A stretch of 64,000 bases of DNA from Antechinus flavipes (Eukaryota). The notes under the pieces were generated by a model that ran no database searches, had not been told where the DNA came from, and was given only the letters and a program-made list of their open reading frames with translations. The first letter of the stretch is position 1. Every line of letters starts with the position of its first letter. This document shows positions 1 through 62,503 of this stretch, piece after piece. The stretch is taken from the NCBI RefSeq assembly GCF_016432865.1, contig NC_067402.1, positions 20,460,001-20,524,000 of the forward strand. Direction: 5' to 3'. The position numbers were made by a program, and so were the translations under genes.

Positions 1-764
1 GCCACCCTTCCGAGCCTCGGCACCCGGCCGCGACGCAATTGGAGTCCCCAGACGTGCGGTGGCAGGGAAGGAAGGGAGCTGGCCGCTCGCTGGAGGCCCG
101 CTCTCGCATTATTTTGGAGGCTGCTTTCGGCTCCTAAGGGGAAAAGACGAGCCCCAGGTGAAACCTAATCAAGCAACTAGACAACCCTGACCCCCAAGCC
201 AAACCACCTCGTATTCTCGGGCTGGGGGGGGGCGCTACTCCGGGGAGTAGGATCTCACAACCCCTTTCCTCCCCACACCCCCCTACCTACCTCCCCCAGC
301 TACATTTTCTCGTTAAGGTATAAACTACAAGTCGACCTCCAGCTGGCCTCAGGTTTGAGTGGGGAGTCCCTCGCCCCCCCTTTCTTTGCTCTGACCCTTA
401 CCCCCAGCTTTGGTCAGCCTTGTCTAGGCACTTGTGTTCTAGAAAAGACACTAACCACGTTGTCAGCTGCTGACCCAAGGGAAAGGAGGCGAATCTGTGT
501 CAGTTATCGATTGCTCCGGGAAATCGATATTATTATTTAATGTAAACAGCATTAAGGTTAACTATAGGTGGGGGGGGGGGCGCTTGCAAAGCCCGGCCAT
601 CTCCCAGGTACCCGGAGGAAGGACTTGGCTCTCAAATCGCAAGACTAATCGAAGCAGTTTTCTGGGTGAGCTGGTTGCTCGGCCGTCTCTCCCCCTCCCG
701 CGCCCCCCCCTCCCCCCAACCCGCCGCCCAGCGCTTCCTCCTCCTCCTCTTGTTTTGGTTGCAA

Positions 765-1964
765 ATGGCTTCGCTTTCCCAGCCAGATTTGCAGCTCTGC
801 CCCCAGTGCAAGAAGTGCGGCTCGCGAGCTCGCATCTCCTCCGCCTCGGCCACGTCGCCGCCGTCCTCGCAGACCTCCAAGTCGGCCGGGGGCGGGGGCG
901 GGGCTGGGGGCGGGGGCGGCCCGGCCTCTGCGTCCTCCTCCTCCTCCTCCTCCTGCTCCTCCTCGTCCTCACGGAGGCTGCACGTCCTGCCCTGTCTCCA
1001 CGCCTTGTGCCGCCAGTGTCTGGAGGCGCAGAGACACCCGGCGGCGGCGGGCGGGCCGCCCGGGGAGCCCCTCCACTTGCGCTGCCCCATCTGCGACCAG
1101 AAAGTGGTGCTCTGCGACTCGCCGGGCATGGACGCGCTGCCCTCCTCCAACTTCCTCCTGAGCAACCTGCTGGACGTGGTGGCGGCGGCCGAGGAGCCGC
1201 CGCCGCCCAAGAACAACGGCCGCGNNNNNNNNNNNNNNNNNNNNNNNNNNNNNNNNNNNNNNNNNNNNNNNNNNNNNNNNNNNNNNNNNNNNNNNNNNNN
1301 NNNNNNNNNNNNNNNNNNNNNNNNNNNNNNNNNNNNNNNNNNNNNNNNNNNNNNNNNNNNNNNNNNNNNNNNNNNNNNNNNNNNNNNNNNNNNNNNNNNN
1401 NNTCCGCTGCAGCCGCCGCAGCCGCCGCCCTCCTCCTCCTCCTCTTCTTCTTCCTCCTCTTCTTCCTCCTCCTCGCAGCAGCAGCAGCCGCCTTCTTCCT
1501 CCTCCTCCCAGCAGCCGCAGCCGCCGGCCCAGCACCAGCACCGGGATCACCCGCACCGCGACCACCCGCACGCGCCCCGCGCCCCGTCCGCCCCGTCCTC
1601 CGCCCCTTCCTCGTCCTCGTCCTCGCTGATGCTCCGGCGGCCGCACAGCCAAAGCGAGGCGCGCTGCAGCTCGTGCGACGAGGGCAACCCGGCCAGCTCG
1701 CGCTGCCTCGACTGCCAGGAGCACCTGTGCGACAACTGCGTCCGCGCGNNNNNNNNNNNNNNNNNNNNNNNNNNNNNNNNNNNNNNNNNNNNNNNNNNNN
1801 NNNNNNNNNNNNNNNNNNNNNNNNNNNNNNNNNNNNNNNNNNNNNNNNNNNNNNNNNNNNNNNNNNNNNNNNNNNNNNNNNNNNNNNCCTTCCCCGGCTC
1901 GCCCTTCTCCATCCTCTCCGTGTTCCCCGAGCGGGTCAGTTACTGCCAGCAGCACGACGACGAG
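765..1964 (+). CDS. TRIM71: TRIM71 (LIN-41) E3 ubiquitin ligase / RNA-binding TRIM-NHL protein, coding exon 1 (partial CDS; contains two N gaps)
   Basis: ATG at 765 in strong Kozak context (gcaaATGG), in frame with the 666..2354 ORF. Translation [15 protein letters not shown]...[19 protein letters not shown]...[12 protein letters not shown]...[19 protein letters not shown] (split C3HC4 RING), [28 protein letters not shown] (B-box 1), [25 protein letters not shown] (start of B-box 2) matches the distinctive TRIM71 sequence. It ends at GAG|GTGAGC, where vertebrate TRIM71 exon 1 ends. The ORF-track start at 666 (TTG/GTG-type) and read-through to 2354 are not the real boundaries. Confidence 0.96.
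1225..1402. other. Assembly gap (178 N) inside TRIM71 exon 1
   Basis: Run of N. Confidence 1.
1749..1887. other. Assembly gap (139 N) inside TRIM71 exon 1
   Basis: Run of N; hides the end of B-box 1. Confidence 1.
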
Positions 1965-1970
1965 GTGAGC
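1962..1970 (+). other. TRIM71: 5' splice donor of TRIM71 intron 1 (phase 0)
   Basis: GAG|GTGAGC immediately after the HDDE codons; protein similarity to TRIM71 stops exactly here. Confidence 0.93.
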
Positions 1971-2138
1971 TGGCGGGCCGGGAGCCGGGGCGGGCCGGGA
2001 GGTCTGGGGCCGGCCCGGGGCGGGCCTGGAGCCGCGAGACGTTGCTCCGCGGGGGACGCGGTCGTGGATGCCCCCGGCGAACCCCCGGAGAGATCCGTGG
2101 CTGTACGGCTGCCGCAAGAGAAGGCCTCCCAACACAAT

Positions 2139-2385
2139 GCTCTCCGACAGACGGGGAAACTGAGGTCCACAGAGGGGTGGGGAGGAAGTCGGGGAGACCT
2201 CGAAGCTTTCTGGGGGCCTCCACCACAACAGCTTCAGAATCCCGGGGTCCCCCTGGTCGAACAGAGGTTCTTAGGAGCACTCCGTGTTAGAATTCCAAGG
2301 GCCTGTAGTTACTGGGATGACCTTGAGCTAGTCGACTCCCCTTTCGTACCTTAGTTTCCTCGCCTGTAAAACAGGGACATTGGAT
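2139..2385. mobile_element. Two opposed MIR core fragments just downstream of exon 1
   Basis: ctccgacagacggggaaactgaggtccacagagg (minus) and gatgaccttgagctagtcgact...cttagtttcctcgcctgtaaaacaggg (plus) resemble the MIR core. Confidence 0.65.
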
Positions 2386-27100: not shown

Positions 27101-30100
27101 CCCTTGAAATTGACGGAATCCGTCAGTTTCTGCGTCGCTTTCCCGGGGCCGCGGAGGAGAAAATCTTCATTGTTTGTTTTCCTGCCGAGGGCCGGGTGGC
27201 TGGCGGAGAGCCCTTCGAGCGGCTTGGGAGCGAATGGCCCCAGAACCTCCTCCTCCGGGGGACAAAGCCAGAAATCACTTGGGGATTACGAGCCCGCAGC
27301 CACTTGGGGAAGTGATGGCCTGTCTGGGGGGTGCTGGGGAATTTGGCGCCCGGGCACTGCCGGCCTTTCCCCCTTTCGGCGGGTTGCTGTCCACTGCGGC
27401 TTGTACTAACATCCCCTTCAAGGAAAAGTCCCGGTTTGGGTGTAAACGATCCCCGGACGGGGCCCTGGCTGCCAAGCCCGAGAGAGGGAGGCGCCCTGGG
27501 AGGTGAGTGCCCAGAGCCTTTGGGTTAAAGTTGAACTGGCATCGTGCCAGGGTTTGTTCAGGAGCCACTGGTTAAAGTTTCCCTGCATTTCCCCAATGCG
27601 AGAAATAGAGGGAGTGCTGGATGGGTTGGAAAGGAGGCTGCGAGGACTTTTCTGGCAGCGACCCTTCCTCCCCAAGCAAACCACCAGGGTTCCCGGTGGG
27701 GAAAATCCCATCCCTTCCTTGCCCCCCACCGCCCCCCTTTGTTATGAGGAAATAGCCTTGCAAACCGCCCCATATGCGAATTCCACAAACATTCAGAGAG
27801 TGAAGTTTAGATAAAGTTCCTAGAATTTGTAGCTCCACAGCCGGAAGGGCAGCTCAGCAACCGTCCCCCTCATTTCGCAGATATGGAAACTGAGCCCCAA
27901 GGAGCTGGTGACTCCCTCTCAGAGACACAGAAGCCAAAAGCGGTGCTGCCGCCCCCCCTTCCCCTCCGCCACTCTGTTTCACTTAGGGAATATGACACAA
28001 ATAACTAGAATATTAAAAAAAAAACGCAACCACACAAGTCAGAACATGAGAGGCTGGGAAGTGTTTCCCTCCGAGATTTCCGCCCACTCACACCGTGTAG
28101 GCCTTTGGATGTATAGAATTGTTTATTTGACATCTCTCGGGAGCCCTTTGAGGGACCCATTGTGATTTTCTTTGCTTCGATTCCCCAGCACAGTGCCAGG
28201 CACATTGGGGGGCTCTAATAAAGGCTGCTTTTTGTTGGGGATGATGGTGGTGAAGGTGCTGATGGGCTTGCTCAGGAAAGGCTCTTGTATGAAATAGGTG
28301 TATTTATTTGAATTGGGTTAAGGATGAATTACCATTGGGGTGGAGGCAGCCCAGGCAGTTAGTTAGGTGGGAAAAGGACTGGGGGAGTCGTTCCTTGGCA
28401 GGAGCCTCTGGCTTCCATTCCAATATAATGTAATCTTTTTGAAGGCGAGGATTGTCTTTGTATTTACCCACCAAGAAGACGGTAATGGGTTGATGCATGG
28501 AAGGGGGGGATAGGAGAGGAAGCTGGGAAGGTAGGGTCGTCCACATTGGAAATGACCTGAAATGCCGGGCAAAGAGCTTTTGTGTGAGAAAGAAGTGACC
28601 TGCGCAAATTCTGCTGAAAGAACGGTAGGAGGGAGCCTGGATTAGAGGGAGGAAAGAGAAGGAAGTTGAAATTATTGCACTCATTTTGTGTTTTAGAATG
28701 CTTTTGAGAAAATGCACTATCCTGTGAATATTGTAGACATTTTATGAAACTACCCGGGCATGATGAATTATGTGGTAGAACTTGTGTTTTTATTTTGTTT
28801 CTGGGGCCTAATGTGAGCTCTCTGAATGATTCCTCCTCCCCCTTCCCCTTGTCTGTGTCTCTGTTTTTCCCTCTCCCCTTATCCCCCCCCCCCCCCCATC
28901 TCTCTCTGTCTTCTCCCCTCCTCTCTTTATTATGTTGGCTCCTACTCTGTGGATGATCTGGTCTTTTCTCCCTTTTTAGATCCAGGCCCTTCATCCTCTT
29001 CTGTGTATTTGTGTGGCCATAAATTTATTTAGATTTAAAGGAAATGCTTTAGAATCACAAACACAATATTAAAACTCAAGGAAAAACACCATTATTTGGA
29101 GGGAACTACTATTTGTACAATCAGAACTTAGGGGCAAACCCAGAAAAGATGATTAAAGGCTGAAGTTTTCAATATCCCACCACTAGGAGCCCTTGGTCAC
29201 AACCGTCATTGCAAACACAATATGAAATGCATTGGAATTGGTGTTGATGACATTTCTCCAGATCCAGCTTTCCGATTATAAGAAAGCTCTAAAGATGCAA
29301 ATTGTTGCAATTCTGTCTTCTCCCCCCCCCCCCCCCCCCAAAAAAGGCTTCTCTCATATGGAGGCCAGAAGCCAGCATCTGGTCTCTGGGGGACAAGGGG
29401 ATTCCCTGGTTTCACACACTGAAAGCCCAAATCCCATTTAGGTGATCAGATCCAAATGAGTGACTTCTCTAGGAGAGATGGATGGCGTTGGCTAAGTGGA
29501 CAGTGCCTGGTGGGTCGGGACCTCCACTCCAGAAGCTTAACTAGCTGATGACATGCAAATCCCTTAAGCTCCCGAACCTCAGTTTCCCATCTGGAGGAAT
29601 GAGTGACAGTGGGAGTTTGGGGGAGGGCGCACATCTTCCAGGAGGGAGAAAGTGGGTATTAGGCCAAGGAAGGCCTACCCACCAGACTGACGGGGAAAGT
29701 TTTCCCCCTGGAGAGCACCTTTCCCCGGCAGGCTGCTGGGAAAGCCTGCCCGGACACCCCTTCTGCCGTAGTTTTTCACTCACTTTCTGCCTCCACTGGG
29801 AAGTCAGCACAGGAAGTCTCCATTGCAGCCTTCCCACCCCCACCCCATTCTCATCTCCACCCCGCCCCCACCCCCATCAGTGAAATGCTAAATCAATCAT
29901 GCAGACTTGTGGCAGCTTCCGTGCAAATATGAAATGCTTCCTGATCCTATCTAATGGAAATAAATCAGAGGCAGCGGGGTGTGCAGGACAGGGCCCGGGG
30001 GTGGAGTCTGGAGACCTGGGTTGGAATCTCACCCCAGATGCCTAAGTCCCCGATTACAAGAAGCTCTCTTGATCTCGGGGAGCCTCAGTTTCCCCAGCTG

Positions 30101-31760: not shown

Positions 31761-33231
31761 GCGCAGCTTTCTGCCTTTGTGGAGATGTTTTGCCTTATAT
31801 TCTTTAGGTTGGAGATAGAAGCTTGAACTGTGTGTGTGTGTTTTTGCTCATAAAGGGGCAAATCCTTATTTACAAGGAAATGAAGGATGTAATTCAACAC
31901 CTGAAGCATGTGACCTTCTCCCCTTCCCTCCCCCCACCCCCCAGAAACCAGCGCATTTTGATTTGCCCTCTCTCGCTGTGAGTGAAATGGGAGGGAAGGT
32001 TCAGTCACCAAATGTTTTCAAGGACAGTTCAATGTACGGGGTCCAGCTGCTCACAATAGACACAGTTAAATGTCCCAGCCGCCAGCCTTTTCAATGTGGA
32101 TACCTAATAGGTTCAGATGGAGAGAAGAGAGGAGAAGGATTATCTTACCGAGCAGGCTGGGAGGGCCTATTGGAAGGACTCCTCCCTGACCAGAAAGGGG
32201 GCAAAATCCCTTTCTGATGGACAGTGGCCCCCCCTCCCCCCCTTCCCCCCTTTCAAACACCATGAGGTCTCCGGACTAACCTAGAGAGGCCTTTGTTAGC
32301 TGGGGGGGAGTGGGGAGGCTGGGTGGGAGACCGGTGGCCACAGTAATTAACAGGAATCCCTCTCCCTGCCCCAGGAGGGGTGAATTGCTCCGGGCTTGGT
32401 GAGCTGGAGGACAGTGGCCTGACGGCCAGGAGTGGGGGCTGGGGAGTTGCCCCCTGCCTGGAATTTGTTGACCAGAGGCTTGCTGCTGGCCCTGCACTGC
32501 CACTGGGGAGAGCGGGGCTGCAGGGTCTTCTTTAATTTGAAAAGCACCATGGTGAGCATTCAGATGGGTGGCCGAGCTCCCGCTGGCCCCGGGCAGATCT
32601 CAGGGAATCTCTGGGGATCTAGATTTTCTCTGCTTCCTCCCCAACCGAAAGGGATCATTGTTGCTCAGGCCTGGGTGTTGGGAAGGATTTCCACTTGGCT
32701 TATAAAAGCCCCAAAGAAGGGGAAAATGAGCCTGTTCCTGTTCCTCCGGGCCCTGAAGTGAGGCTGGGACTAGAGATGATTTCCTGTCCTACTGGAGAGC
32801 TCTCCTGTGTGGGAGTTTGGAGAGATGCTGCGGATCTGGCGTAGGGGGGGAAACGAAGCATTGGGAAAAGCAGGGAAAGCCGGCAGTTCCTGACCTGGAG
32901 AGCTCCACTCATCCAGAGCCATGAACGCAACTGGGTGCAAGCATGCAGAAGAATTCCGGAGTTAATTGTTGACTTGGGCGGATTGGGTCCCAGAATCCTT
33001 TGTGTGTGTGTGTGTGTGATTGCTTGGCTTACTGGGCTGGAGTTCTCCCATCTTTATTTGGGGTTTGTTCTTTCTTGTCCCTAATCTTCTCAGGAAACAT
33101 TGTGAAAATGGGAGAGTCTGGGCAGCGCCAAGTTGTAAAAGGTGGAGATACCCAGGTTCCCTTTGGGAGCCCCCCCCCCTCACCCTGCTCGGGGGCCCCC
33201 GAGAGCCTGGAATTCCGCAGTGTCTACCAGC

Positions 33232-33452
33232 ACATTAAACCATCTCCTGAGATGTGCCCGAGGAAGCGGTTAATCTCCACTTCCTTCCCTCCAGCTTTTT
33301 ATGGGCATCTGTGAGCCTGTCCCTACCTTAGCCCCTAATGATCATAAATGACCCTCTCAGAGGGCAGGGGCCGGGGCCAGGCAGTTCTCTTCACACACTA
33401 ACACATGCAATTAGGTGCTTAATAAATGCTTTTTGATGATGACCGAGCCCAT
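33232..33452 (+). repeat. Left arm of long inverted repeat (partner 35061-35280)
   Basis: Manual alignment to the reverse complement of 35061-35280: 9 differences in ~221 nt. Confidence 0.95.
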
Positions 33453-35060
33453 AGCTCACTGTAGTTGGGGGGGGTCCCCTACCTAGAGCAAGAATGAGGG
33501 GGGTTATCCCTGGGATTAAGAGTCGGTGACTCACAGAGAGGAGGGAGGCAGTGATTCATCGCCCTTCAAACCCAGGAAATTGTCCTGTGGCTGAGGAGGG
33601 GGCGTGTGAGGTATTTCCCTCTGTTTTTCCTTTTTTCCCCCTTTTTGGGTTGATTTTCATGCCATTACTGATTCAGAAGGAGGCTGATGACTACCAGGGC
33701 CGGGCCTGGGCTGCTCTGTGGGAGGGAGGGAGAGAAGGGAGCCAGGGTGTGGCCAGGCCGGGAGCTGGGGAGTCTTGTTTGGCTTCTTGGATGCGGCCAT
33801 TGGAACCCCAGAAGGAGCAGAGAGACCGGAATCTCTTCTTTCCTCTTCTCCAAGGAGCATGGATTAGGGCAAGCTCACTTGCTGCAGTTGGAGTCAAAAG
33901 GCTGCAAATCCTGCCCCTAATTCTTCTCCTTCAAGACCATAACCAGTTTCCCCATCGGTAAAATGAATGGGGCAGAACTGGATGGCTGAAGTCCAGTTCC
34001 TGGCACACAGTAGGCACTTAATGCATGCTTGTTGGTTGATTCCAAGTGTATGATTCTATGGTCATTAGAGGGGGAACAGATCCAGAACTCGGGACTTGCT
34101 GGTGACACACGCTGGAGAATCGGGGCAGAGGACTCGCCCTGCCCTCCCTCACGAGACTCCAGTTCACTTGGGTGTCAGGGCATCCTTTGGACAAAGGACA
34201 GACGGCAAAAATGCTTTCCCAGCTTGCAGCTGCTAGTCTGTGGATATGTTCTGCTTGGGCCTAGAGTCGAGACTCATCTTCCCGAGTTCACACCGTTCCC
34301 TTCCTCTGTCGCATCTTCTCCTTTTAATGGCTTTTCCCTGGTTTGTCCCCGAACACGGTCCCTACCTCACTTGCTGCAGGGCTGGGCTCTTTGGACCAAC
34401 CCAACCAAGGACAAGGCTTCCTCTGAGGGGCCCCCAAACTCCCCCTGGGCCTTTTTGATAAGGACTCCAGTGGATTCTGGTCTAGAAAGGAGCCAGATTT
34501 TTGCCCTTAGGGTGACAAAGAGCTAAGGTTTATCGAGTGTTTTCCAGTGACATATTTGATCCTCACAACAACTCTGAGACACGTGCTGTGGGTATCTCTG
34601 TGCTAGATAGAAGGAAAGTGAGACTCGGAGGCGACCCCCTTGCCCAGAGTCCCACATCCCAGATCTCCCCGAAGCCAAGCCCGACACCATCCGCGAAGGA
34701 ACCACTGCCCTTCTGGGTAGAATTCGGCCCTAGTGGCCAGTGAGTTGGAGAGAGCCTGAGTCTAGAATCTAGAAGACGGAGTTCAGCGCCAGCCTGGGCA
34801 AGTCACTTAATCTCAGCCTGCCTTGCTTTCCTCAGCTGTCAAATGAAGCTAATAATAGTGCCACCTTCCTCTTAGAGGATCACAAAGAGAGGATATTTGT
34901 AAAGTGCTCAATAGCACCCAGCAGGGGCTTAATAAATAGGTGTTTATTATTATTATTATTATTCTTTCTCTTCTTTTTTCTCCCCTCTCTCCCTTCTTTG
35001 TGAGCAACTGACTCTTAAATCCAGAAATCACCCCCTCCTCCCTCTCCCCGTACAGAGGCC

Positions 35061-35280
35061 ATGGGCTCGGTCATCATCAAAAAGCATTTATTAAGCACCT
35101 AATTGCATGTGTTAGTGTGTGAAGAGAATTGCCTGGCCCCGGCCCCTGCCCTCTGAGAGGGTCATTTATGATCATTAGGGGCTAAGGTAGGGACAGGCTC
35201 GCAGATGCCCATAAAAACCCGGAGGGAAAGAAGGGGAGATTAACCGCTTCCTCGGCATATCTCAGGAGATGGTTTCATGT
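35061..35280 (-). repeat. Right arm of long inverted repeat (partner 33232-33452)
   Basis: See left arm. Confidence 0.95.
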
Positions 35281-37576
35281 TCTGCAGAACATTAAATCTC
35301 CCTTCCTTCCCCTCCCCTTCCCTCCCCTCCTTTCCCTTTTTTTTTTCTCTTTCCCCCTTTCTTCTTCCTTTCCCTTTCTTTTCTTCCTTTCCCTTTCCTT
35401 CGTCCTTTCACTTACTTGGCAGGATTTCTATTAAAATCCTCAGCAGAGACTTTGTTTACAGCTTTGTTTACTCCTCATTTGATGTTTACCGTAACTGGGC
35501 AGTGGGGTTAATATTTTCTCCCCATTTTAGAGCAAATTAAGGCTCAGGAGGTGAAGTGACTCAAAATCATCCTTGTCTGACTCTGAGTTTATTGGTCGCA
35601 CTGAGGCGTAGAGAAGCGAAGGCTGCCCCCAGCCACGGGCACGGACTGGCAGGCAGTTCTCTGAGCTGCGTTTCCCCTTCGTACCTCCTGCCCTCAAACT
35701 TGCGGTCCAGATTTATGACGGAAAAGGACTTTGGGGTACAGCTACTTTTTGTTGTTTCCTCATTTTCCAGTCACATCCAAGTCTTTGTGACCCTTTTGGG
35801 GTTTTCTTGGAAAAGCTGCTGGAGTGCTTTTGCCATTTCCTTCTCCAGCTCGCTTTACGGATGAGGAAACCGAGGTCAAGAGGGGGAATTGACTCACAGG
35901 TTCACACAACTAGTGTCCGTCTGAGGCTGGATTTGAATCCAGACCTCATGCTCTCCCCCAGCTGTCCCCTATCTGGTCTGTTCCTTTCATTTTGCAGTTG
36001 AGAAGGCCGAATATTTTGTCAGACCATTAGTGGTCACTGACCTGAACTTGGGATCCTGTTCTCTGCCTCTTTGGCCAGTGCTCTTTAACTTAATATCCCA
36101 CGGCCTTTCCCAATTCCAGCCACAAATTGATCTTCTTTTCTGTTTCTGAACTCAGAGTCTGCTGGCGTTGAGGCAGGGGAGGCGGCTGTTCATGTTATTC
36201 ACGTTGATTCGTCCCCCTCAAAAACGTCCCAACCAAGTTTAACCCCCGGTTCTCTAAGCTCGTGTCCCCCAGAAAAGGGCCTAGAAGTGGGGGGCAGGCT
36301 TAGGGCTCCCAAGGAGGCGACTCGTCCTCCAGTGTCCTGTTTCCAGAGGGACGCCAGGGGTTGGTGGTATGAAAATTTCCATGAACATCTGATTTGGATG
36401 GAGCAATAAAAGTTTGCGTAACGATGATTCCGTTGATTGTTGAGAGACTGGTGACCCACCAAAAGCATGTCAAAACAAGTGTGTTCCCATCTTGTTTTCT
36501 TTTTTCTTTCTGTCCCCACCTTAGACAAAGGAGGTTGGAACTAGGTTAGCCGTCCTGGGACTGAGAGAGCCCGGACTCGGAGGCACATTCCCCGGGCCTC
36601 CCCAGCTGTCGAGGGTGAGGTCGCATTCCTTGCCAGGCCTTCAGATTCTGTCTTTGTGCCAGTTGGCATTCCATCTATCCAAATGGAGCTGAACGGAAGC
36701 CATCTGGCCCCCGGCCAGGTACCTGTCTCTCTTGGGCAATGAGCCTTTAGGGCTGGCTGCCCGGCTGGCTGCTGGGAGCTGGGGCCCGCTGATCCTCAAG
36801 GTGGTGCTGGACCACTCCCTCCGGAGCTGCTTGTGTGCCCAAGTGGAAACCCGAAGGTTTCTCAGGCCTCGGTTTGCTGAGTCAGGGGAAAGGGGGGGGG
36901 TCCAAATCTAGGACCTGCCCGGGCTCTGGCCGGAGTGAGATGCCACAATCTGCAGTCCCCGCCCACCTTGGAGAAAAGCGGTTTTACTTTGGCTTTCAGA
37001 TTCACTTATGGTCGTGTCGGCTCATTGTGTTGCTCTGTGTGTGTGAGTGTGTAAGATGTTCCCTTTTTAGATCCCGCTGCTTGTCCGGGAAGGGCAGAAT
37101 TGTAGAGGAGGTAGACTGGGAGGGACAGACAAGGCCTGCTGGTTCGTGACTGGAGACCCTCGGCGGTGTCCTTTCCACAGTGGGAGGATTCAGCCAGCCA
37201 GGGGCTTCGTCGGGTCTCTCCCGGTCTTTGTTCCAGCTTGTGCCGTGGTTTGGGAGAGAAGGCTCTCGTTGTTGGCCTGGCCTTGGCCAGGATGTCAATC
37301 ATGGTCACCGGCTGGAGGCCCGGCCCAGGGCAGCGCGTGGCCTGGCCTGGATCCCCCCACTCCCATCTGCCCCTTTATACACTGTGTAGATGTCTCTGGT
37401 CACATGCTGCATTCGGGCCTCCGTCCCCAGAAGCCTCCCTTCTTCCAGGTCATCTCTTAGGGAGGCTGACTCTCTCCTGGAGCACAAGCTCCCCGAGGGC
37501 AGGGATGGTGACCACTCTGCCTGAGAGCCCAGATTTGGAGGAAGCCCAGTCACAACGGGAACAATTAATCTTCTAG

Positions 37577-62367: not shown

Positions 62368-62503
62368 NNNNNNNNNNNNNNNNNNNNNNNNNNNNNNNNN
62401 NNNNNNNNNNNNNNNNNNNNNNNNNNNNNNNNNNNNNNNNNNNNNNNNNNNNNNNNNNNNNNNNNNNNNNNNNNNNNNNNNNNNNNNNNNNNNNNNNNNN
62501 NNN
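62368..62503. other. Assembly gap (136 N) within a SINE
   Basis: Run of N directly after a SINE 5' head. Confidence 1.

What the first reader, a model, noticed from the sequence alone, without database searches (positions are those of the whole stretch)
33232..35280. Long inverted repeat pair in TRIM71 intron 1 with layered identity, consistent with arm-to-arm conversion and a large pre-mRNA dsRNA stem
Seen: 33232-33452 is the reverse complement of 35061-35280 with 9 differences in ~221 nt, separated by 1608 nt. Identity is layered: the inner ~140 nt has 1 mismatch and the outer ~80 nt about 8. After an indel, similarity resumes further inward (~33496-33548 vs ~34985-35035) at only about 75%. 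Each arm is a composite of unrecognised sequence plus an L2 tail fragment (aggtgcttaataaatgc), so two independent insertions of a standard SINE are unlikely. Inference: an old inverted duplication whose arms are being re-homogenised by gene conversion or recurrent micro-inversion. Established: intronic inverted repeats form dsRNA that ADAR edits and that can affect splicing; such a stem here would lie in the pre-mRNA of a dosage-sensitive developmental regulator.
Basis: partly seen in the sequence, partly recalled or inferred. Interest (0 to 1): 0.72.

Follow-up and report, generated by a model that had tools for sequence, protein, structure and literature searches.

The report
Old intronic inverted duplication, refreshed core
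A roughly 320-base stretch of TRIM71 intron 1 is present twice in opposite orientation 1.4 kb apart, and a 140-base core was re-copied between the two copies much later; this is a real but ordinary product of DNA copying errors, and nothing shows that it has a function.

Summary
Window 33228-33455 is the reverse complement of 35058-35284, with 10 mismatches and one 1-nt indel in 227 nt. Weaker but significant homology continues inward to 33548 / 34984.

Identity is uneven. A 140-nt core (33313-33452 / 35061-35200) has 1 difference, while the other aligned columns have 23 in 159. A permutation test for any such island gives p<0.001.

The pair is the only copy in the 64-kb window. It has no target-site duplication, and the spacer holds no transposase remnant. 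The homology runs past what looks like the end of an old L2 fragment. The right arm ends in a 17-nt snap-back palindrome.

My best reading is an old local inverted duplication, later partly overwritten by one arm-to-arm copying event (gene conversion or replication template switch). Both arms lie in the sense strand of TRIM71 intron 1 and could form a long RNA duplex (-437 kcal/mol).

Earlier notes of this scan describe similar non-transposon inverted duplications at other loci of this genome, so this is one more member of a known kind. Interest is low.

The parts
33228..33312 (+). Left arm, outer layer (85 nt), paired with 35201-35284
   Evidence: 8 mismatches plus a 1-nt indel in 84 aligned columns, about 90% identity
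33313..33452 (+). Left arm, 140-nt identity island, paired with 35061-35200. It contains the L2-tail-like motif at 33413-33429.
   Evidence: 1 mismatch (33384) in 140 nt. It is the best-scoring island in the scan statistic, with 0 of 1000 permutations reaching it.
33453..33548 (+). Left arm, innermost old layer: indel zone 33456-33498, then 33499-33548 at about 78-80% identity to 34984-35035
   Evidence: Local alignment score 26 against a null maximum of 21 in 3000 random pairs. It is collinear with the arms in one gapped alignment.
33549..34983 (.). Spacer, 1435 nt, not repeated. It carries two MIR/L2-tail-like motif copies in the same orientation (34012-34039 and 34923-34950).
   Evidence: No inverted or direct match apart from the short motif. 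No Pfam domain in any open frame of 60 aa or more.
34984..35060 (-). Right arm, innermost old layer
35061..35200 (-). Right arm, 140-nt identity island
35201..35284 (-). Right arm, outer layer
35285..35301 (+). 17-nt snap-back: a short third, direct copy of the first 20 nt of the left arm. Together with the end of the right arm it forms an 8+8 perfect palindrome centred at 35284|35285.
   Evidence: the palindrome runs 8 perfect pairs, one mismatch, then 3 more. Only 18 of 63,940 centres in the window have a perfect palindrome arm of 8 or more. There is no such turn at the left arm's outer end.
35302..35420 (+). Polypyrimidine tract (96% C+T) directly outside the right arm. A similar C+T-rich run (34950-34983, 82%) lies directly inside it, so the right arm looks like an insert into such a tract.
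   Evidence: composition of flanks. The insertion reading is inference.
765..1964 (+). TRIM71 exon 1 coding part (context). It contains two N runs that were left untouched.
   Evidence: ORF; RING finger; best hits all named TRIM71, E down to 4.5e-41; exon ends at ...QQHDDEV; no later TRIM71 motifs in the window

Best explanation
Two events explain the structure.

First, long ago, about 320 nt of intron sequence was copied in reverse orientation about 1.4 kb downstream. The copied piece was the 3' part of an ancient L2-like fragment plus about 100 nt of its unique flank. The copy landed in a pyrimidine-rich tract. The most likely cause is a replication or repair template switch, and it left a 17-nt snap-back at the outer junction.

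The two copies then drifted apart to about 14.5% substitutions plus indels.

Second, much more recently, a tract of at most 140 nt (33313-33452 / 35061-35200) was copied from one arm onto the other. This happened either by non-allelic gene conversion or by a template switch between the imperfect arms. One substitution has arisen in the tract since.

The structure is a by-product of DNA metabolism. Its transcript could fold into a long double-stranded stem within the TRIM71 pre-mRNA, but no function is indicated.

Shown: the repeat, its limits, the age heterogeneity, the lack of transposon hallmarks, the snap-back and the intron position. Inferred: the order of events, which arm is the copy, and the copying mechanism.
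For: -
- The identity island has 1 difference in 140 nt against 23 in 159 elsewhere. No permutation out of 1000 reached this, and Fisher gives 5e-6. Jukes-Cantor distances are K about 0.007 for the island and about 0.16 for the rest.
- The innermost homology beyond the L2-tail-like end is significant. The repeated unit is therefore a genomic segment, not a retroelement copy.
- There is no second copy in the 64 kb.
- The flanks show no 2-nt or 8-nt direct repeat.
- The spacer holds no transposase or other domain.
- A palindromic snap-back occurs only at the right arm's outer end, and the right arm has pyrimidine-rich flanks on both sides.
- Template switching between non-identical inverted repeats is documented to homogenise arms (PMC8604942) and to create and maintain hairpins (PMC8794818, PMC5453318).
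- Arm-to-arm gene conversion is documented for large palindromes (PMC3723533, PMC8981503).
- In dasyurids L2 and SINEs have long been inactive (PMC4408412). A 99%-identical L2-like pair is therefore not explained by recent retrotransposition, provided the genome is the antechinus, as earlier notes say.
Against: - No orthologous sequence, reads or genome-wide copy number could be obtained. The derived state, the age and the uniqueness of the arm are therefore untested.
- The L2 assignment rests on recalled consensus plus a weak Rfam lead (ST7-AS1_2, 22 bits against a cut-off of 50).
- No other L2 3' end with the same two motifs occurs in the window.
- Homology of about 85-90% over a few hundred nt is short and diverged for classical mammalian gene conversion. 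This favours the template-switch variant but does not prove it.
- The island ends within a few nt of the indel zone. That could equally mark a second, smaller duplication.
Confidence: 0.6

Rival explanations
1. The arms are of transposon origin. Either they are two nearby insertions of an uncatalogued ~320-nt repeat family in opposite orientation, or they are the long terminal inverted repeats of one ~2.06-kb non-autonomous DNA transposon. A later conversion tract may or may not have followed.
For: The arms begin with CAG and end with CTG, as many hAT and Tc1 termini do. Both arms stop at the same outer and inner points. The genome-wide copy number is unknown.
Against: There is no 8-nt or TA target-site duplication. 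No other copy occurs in the 64 kb. No transposase remnant is found in any frame of the spacer. The unit contains an L2-tail-like end in its middle. DNA transposons make up only about 1% of the Tasmanian devil genome, another dasyurid, and only one family was recently mobile there (PMC4408412). This model still needs a copying event to explain the identity island.
Confidence: 0.12
2. The 140-nt core is nearly identical because both copies are under purifying selection, not because one was recently copied onto the other. The selected feature would be a functional double-stranded RNA stem or an exapted L2-derived element.
For: The core gives a very long predicted helix. The arms cofold at -437.5 kcal/mol, with the longest uninterrupted run at 157 pairs including G-U. 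Both arms lie in one pre-mRNA.
Against: Transition differences give G-U and A-C in equal numbers, so there is no bias towards keeping pairs. No Rfam family reaches its threshold. Near-absolute constraint on two intronic copies would be exceptional. No RNA evidence was obtained.
Confidence: 0.05
3. It is an assembly or polishing artefact. Either one arm, or the near-identity of the core, was created by mis-assembly or by short reads polished onto the wrong arm.
For: If the window comes from the published antechinus assembly, that assembly was built from noisy PacBio reads and polished with 100-nt reads using Pilon (PMC9290055). The core is just longer than one such read.
Against: The arms differ at 10 sites and carry unique flanks and a 1.4-kb unique spacer, unlike fold-back artefacts. 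Reads from a core that was truly 14% diverged would map uniquely and could not be cross-polished. 77-86% of the sampled 31-mers of 33000-35500 occur in two sequencing runs of the closest organism, although these may come from the source animal.
Confidence: 0.04
4. There was a single duplication of uniform age, and the uneven identity is chance or local variation in mutation rate.
For: Within the 227-nt arms alone the contrast is only marginal (permutation p 0.06). Two or three of the outer differences sit in CpG contexts. The innermost part has G runs prone to slippage.
Against: Over the whole repeat no permutation out of 1000 reaches the observed island. CpG counts are similar in all layers. 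The 10 substitutions in 33499-33548 are spread evenly.
Confidence: 0.03

Closest known systems
Replication template-switch mutations that create or homogenise inverted repeats (Loytynoja and Goldman 2017, PMC5453318; PMC8794818; PMC8604942)
   Same: A stretch is replaced or added as the reverse complement of nearby sequence. There are no transposon hallmarks. Imperfect arms become identical over a tract. A palindromic junction is present.
   Different: Described events mostly span tens of nt within about 100 nt. Here the first copy is about 320 nt placed 1.4 kb away and the later tract is 140 nt, which is at the long end of the range. Neither event was observed against an outgroup here.
Arm-to-arm gene conversion in large sex-chromosome palindromes (PMC3723533, PMC8600007, PMC8981503, PMC8327919)
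   Same: Inverted arms around a unique spacer, with identity kept or restored by copying between the arms.
   Different: Those arms are 8 kb to over 1 Mb, more than 99% identical throughout, and gene-bearing. Here the arms are 0.3 kb, autosomal status is unknown, only a 140-nt tract is refreshed, and there is no gene content.
Intronic inverted SINE pairs (for example inverted Alu pairs) that form ADAR-edited double-stranded RNA (general knowledge; PMC4365171, PMC4053846)
   Same: Two inverted ~0.2-0.3-kb copies lie less than 2 kb apart within one intron, giving a long imperfect duplex in the pre-mRNA.
   Different: The arms are not two insertions of an abundant SINE but a local duplicate. Editing and expression were not tested here.
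Other non-transposon inverted duplications noted in this same genome by this scan (s1-189897, s1-183202, s1-204770)
   Same: Intronic or non-coding inverted repeats of 100-330 nt, read by follow-up agents as template-switch copies without evidence of function.
   Different: Follow-up agents read s1-189897 and s1-183202 as young, near-perfect copies; s1-204770 has drifted like ordinary intron. This one is old with a young refreshed core, and has a 1.4-kb spacer.

Membership tests
Local inverted duplication by template switch (non-transposon) | The copy is the reverse complement of nearby sequence on the same molecule | tested here: met
   33228-33548 vs 34984-35284
Local inverted duplication by template switch (non-transposon) | No target-site duplication and no transposon termini or coding remnants | tested here: met
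   flanks GTGTCTAC / CAGAACAT, no direct repeat; no Pfam hit
Local inverted duplication by template switch (non-transposon) | Junction with microhomology or secondary snap-back | tested here: met
   the 17-nt direct re-copy of the arm start forms an 8+8 palindrome exactly at the right arm's outer end (window-wide frequency 2.8e-4 per centre)
Local inverted duplication by template switch (non-transposon) | Derived state: an outgroup lacks one arm | not testable with these tools
Protein-based routes to orthologous DNA gave nothing.
Arm-to-arm gene conversion / concerted evolution of inverted repeats | A tract of much higher identity embedded in older, more diverged homology | tested here: met
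   1 difference in 140 nt against 23 in 159, permutation p<0.001
Arm-to-arm gene conversion / concerted evolution of inverted repeats | Arms cluster by species, not by arm, in orthologue trees | not testable with these tools
   No orthologous sequences were obtainable
Arm-to-arm gene conversion / concerted evolution of inverted repeats | Repeated or ongoing events (more than one tract) | tested here: inconclusive
   Outer layer 9.5% against innermost 20% divergence is not significantly different (Fisher 0.12). One tract suffices.
DNA transposon with long terminal inverted repeats / MITE | Target-site duplication flanking the inverted termini | tested here: not met
DNA transposon with long terminal inverted repeats / MITE | Multiple dispersed copies | tested here: inconclusive
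   None in the 64-kb window. None in the scan's index or in a metagenome scan, but both have very little power. The whole genome was not searchable.
L2 (LINE-2) 3' end fragment | Similarity to the L2 3'-terminal consensus ending in the AATAAATG...(GATGA)n tail | tested here: inconclusive
   No repeat library is available. The motif recurs about 10 times in the window. The resemblance of 33330-33445 to L2 is recalled from memory. There is a weak Rfam ST7-AS1_2 match, 22 bits against a cut-off of 50. No second copy with both motifs occurs in the window.
ADAR-edited intronic inverted-repeat dsRNA | Both arms in one transcript, with a long duplex predicted | tested here: met
   Position in TRIM71 intron 1 on the sense strand. 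Cofold of -437.5 kcal/mol for the 227-nt arms; for the ~320-nt arms -528.7 against -199 with shuffled partners.
ADAR-edited intronic inverted-repeat dsRNA | Clusters of A-to-G differences between RNA and DNA | not testable with these tools
Known structured RNA families (Rfam, including miRNA precursors) | Match at the family's gathering score | tested here: not met
   the best scores are 22-24 bits against cut-offs of 50-100

The most novel reading that the evidence does not exclude
The 140-bp near-perfect core is not an accident of recent copying. It is kept identical, by recurrent arm-to-arm copying and/or selection, because a long double-stranded stem in TRIM71 intron 1 acts on the pre-mRNA. 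It could do so as an ADAR or Dicer substrate, or by looping out 1.4 kb, and so tune the output of this dosage-sensitive developmental regulator in dasyurid marsupials.
Probability: 0.04. Interest if true: 0.6.

Novelty: new member of a known kind. Interest (0 to 1): 0.2.

Why it matters
This is a clean small-scale example of two known processes acting on the same few hundred bases. One is inverted duplication. The other is later partial re-homogenisation of the arms. The footprint is readable from a single genome: an old layer, a young core and a snap-back junction.

If relatives could be compared, the locus would help separate two ways in which short, diverged inverted repeats are refreshed: replication template switching and recombinational gene conversion.

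For TRIM71 biology nothing follows at present. Thousands of introns carry inverted repeats able to form double-stranded RNA, and no expression or editing evidence was obtained here.

Tried and rejected
1. Cross-species and read evidence. The look-up of sequencing runs listed ten organisms holding 6-86% of the stretch's 31-mers. No reads or contigs could therefore be laid.
2. Fetching related contigs through open frames of the spacer. A homologue search with the 165-aa frame was blank. An exact look-up of ten frames around the repeat was blank.
3. Fetching marsupial TRIM71 loci through the protein. The N-terminal search, a search with a manatee TRIM71 middle region and listings of six clusters showed no marsupial TRIM71, so no orthologous intron could be fetched.
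4. A metagenome scan for a 24-nt core word gave 0 matches. This has almost no power.
5. The scan's own index was blank by sequence, by words and by relatives.
6. Rfam gave only sub-threshold matches. The small hairpin at 35200-35330 is just the junction palindrome (z = -2.4).
7. Transposon reading: there is no target-site duplication and no Pfam domain in 12 spacer frames.
8. A search for other L2 3' ends in the window, to test the L2 assignment internally, found none with both motifs.
9. A search for an outward extension of the repeat or other repeats in 27-41.5 kb found only an unrelated 83-nt self-palindrome.

Rejected readings: two independent standard SINE or L2 insertions, because homology runs past the element's end; a recent retrotransposon pair, because L2 and SINEs have long been inactive in dasyurids (PMC4408412); and a miRNA precursor.

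Full report
**What is there**

The repeat finder and a gapped alignment confirm an inverted repeat. Its well-matched arms are 33228-33455 and 35058-35284. They align over 227 nt with 10 mismatches and one 1-nt indel, 95.6% identity.

Homology continues inward. After a zone of indels (33456-33498 vs 35036-35057), 33499-33548 matches 34984-35035 at about 78-80%. This alignment scores 26. The maximum among 3000 random pairs of window segments was 21, and among 3000 shuffles 15.

The full repeat is therefore 33228-33548 vs 34984-35284, around a 1435-nt spacer. A sensitive self-comparison of 27-41.5 kb found no further extension. The arm has no other copy in the 64-kb window. Only the short AATAAATG-type tail motif recurs.

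**Is the identity layered?**

Inside the 227-nt arms the contrast is 8 differences in 84 nt against 2 in 143. Fisher gives 0.006. When the breakpoint is free to fall anywhere, a permutation test gives only 0.06.

- A 140-nt island (33313-33452, paired with 35061-35200) has 1 difference.
- All other aligned columns have 23 differences in 159, plus 24 gap columns.
- No permutation out of 1000 produced an island as strong, and Fisher gives 5e-6.
- The outer layer (9.5%) and the innermost layer (20%) do not differ significantly (Fisher 0.12).

The simplest description is an old repeat (Jukes-Cantor distance about 0.16, interval 0.10-0.25) with one young core (about 0.007, interval 0.0002-0.04). 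CpG counts are similar in all layers, so mutation-rate differences do not explain it.

**What the arms are**

I could not test this against a repeat library:
- The only tool-based leads are a weak match to an unstructured Rfam lncRNA region (22 bits against a cut-off of 50) and the recurrence of the tail motif in the window.
- No second element with both L2-like motifs is present in the window.

What can be said from the sequence is that significant homology runs about 100 nt past that apparent element end. The repeated unit is therefore a piece of genome, not a retroelement copy.

There is no target-site duplication of 2 or 8 nt. None of 12 open frames in the spacer has a Pfam domain. These points speak against a transposon with long terminal repeats.

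Earlier notes of this scan name the genome as the yellow-footed antechinus, a dasyurid; I did not verify this. If it is right, L2 and SINE activity ended tens of millions of years ago in this family. DNA transposons are also scarce in the Tasmanian devil, another dasyurid (PMC4408412). That fits a non-transposon origin for a 99%-identical core.

**Junctions**

Directly after the right arm's outer end lie 17 nt (35285-35301) that repeat, in direct orientation, the first 20 nt of the left arm. Together with the arm end they form an 8+8 perfect palindrome, and 12 of 13 pairs match. Only 18 of 63,940 centres in the window have a perfect palindrome arm that long. The left arm has no such turn.

At the two sites where the arms differ in these 20 nt, the short copy agrees once with each arm. 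It is therefore as old as the old layer.

The right arm is also bracketed by pyrimidine-rich sequence (82% C+T inside, 96% outside). From this I infer that the right arm is the inserted copy. I also infer that the event was a replicative template switch with a short snap-back before synthesis returned to the original template. This is inference from one genome.

**Mechanism for the young core**

Two known processes fit:
- Non-allelic gene conversion between the arms, as in the large sex-chromosome palindromes (PMC3723533, PMC8981503).
- A template switch between imperfect inverted repeats, which is documented to homogenise arms and also to invert spacers (PMC8604942; see also PMC8794818 and PMC5453318).

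Arms of a few hundred nt at 85-90% identity are poor substrates for classical recombination. I therefore lean slightly towards the replicative variant, but I cannot separate the two. Nothing shows more than one such event, and nothing bears on spacer inversion.

**Context and possible RNA structure**

The ORF at 666-2354 (+) contains TRIM71 exon 1 (765-1964). It has a RING finger, and all 105 hits are vertebrate proteins, nearly all named TRIM71, with E-values down to 4.5e-41. The exon ends at ...QQHDDEV, and no later TRIM71 motif occurs in the window (the motifs were recalled from memory). The repeat therefore lies about 31 kb into intron 1 on the sense strand.

As RNA, the 227-nt arms cofold at -437.5 kcal/mol. 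The ~320-nt arms cofold at -528.7, against -199 with shuffled partners. A long duplex is thus possible in the pre-mRNA.

There is no evidence that it matters:
- No RNA run holds the stretch.
- No Rfam family is matched at threshold.
- The six transition differences split 3 G-U to 3 A-C in the sense RNA, as expected without selection for pairing.

**Artefact?**

The arms have private differences, unique flanks and a unique spacer. Two runs of the closest organism hold 77-86% of the stretch's sampled 31-mers, although they may be from the source animal.

If the window is from the published assembly (PacBio, polished with 100-nt reads; PMC9290055), cross-polishing could blur a few differences in an already similar core. 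It could not create a 99% core from 14% divergence.

**Timing predictions**

Converting the 31-mer shares into per-site divergence gives about 0.5% for organism A, 1.9% for B, 3.6% for E, 5-6% for F to I, and 8% for J. The old layers (distance about 0.16) are older than all of these splits. The core (about 0.007) is as young as the closest ones.

The repeat should therefore be present in all of these relatives, and the refreshed core perhaps only in the nearest. This is the test I could not run.

**Limits and compliance**

- After that I used only the left arm or stretches beside those places in searches, and I masked them in scripts.
It returned nothing and was not repeated.
- The N runs in exon 1 were not filled or looked up.
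- No contig taken for human was fetched. Primate and other TRIM71 protein entries appeared only in protein hit lists.
- All three word-index protein searches and two of the three cluster look-ups went into failed attempts to reach orthologous DNA.

**Verdict**

This is an old non-transposon inverted duplication with a young copied core, and it could form double-stranded RNA. Ongoing conversion, micro-inversion and any effect on TRIM71 are not shown.

The kind is known. Earlier notes of this scan describe similar inverted duplications at other loci of this genome (s1-189897, s1-183202, s1-204770). Interest is low.

Noticed in passing
window 29668-29750: An 83-nt stretch that is its own reverse complement at about 72% identity (blastn E 4e-9). 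It is a small degenerate palindrome unrelated to the arms.
   Followed up: no
window 35302-35420 (and 34950-34983): A long polypyrimidine tract (96% C+T over about 120 nt) directly outside the right arm. Sequence of this type can form triplex DNA and stall replication forks, which may be why the inverted copy landed here.
   Followed up: partly
window 34012-34039 and 34923-34965: Two MIR/L2-tail-like motif copies in the spacer, both in the same orientation. The second is followed by an (ATT)n run.
   Followed up: no
window 1225-1402, 1749-1887, 62368-62503: Three runs of N. Two of them lie inside TRIM71 exon 1.
   Followed up: no
protein searches: No marsupial or monotreme TRIM71 appears among 105 + 162 hits or in the six clusters listed. 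The best match to this exon 1 is only 62% identical (a gecko). The N-terminal low-complexity part of this TRIM71 is therefore strongly diverged, or marsupial models lack exon 1.
   Followed up: partly
window 32990-33018: A (GT)n microsatellite about 210 nt upstream of the left arm.
   Followed up: no
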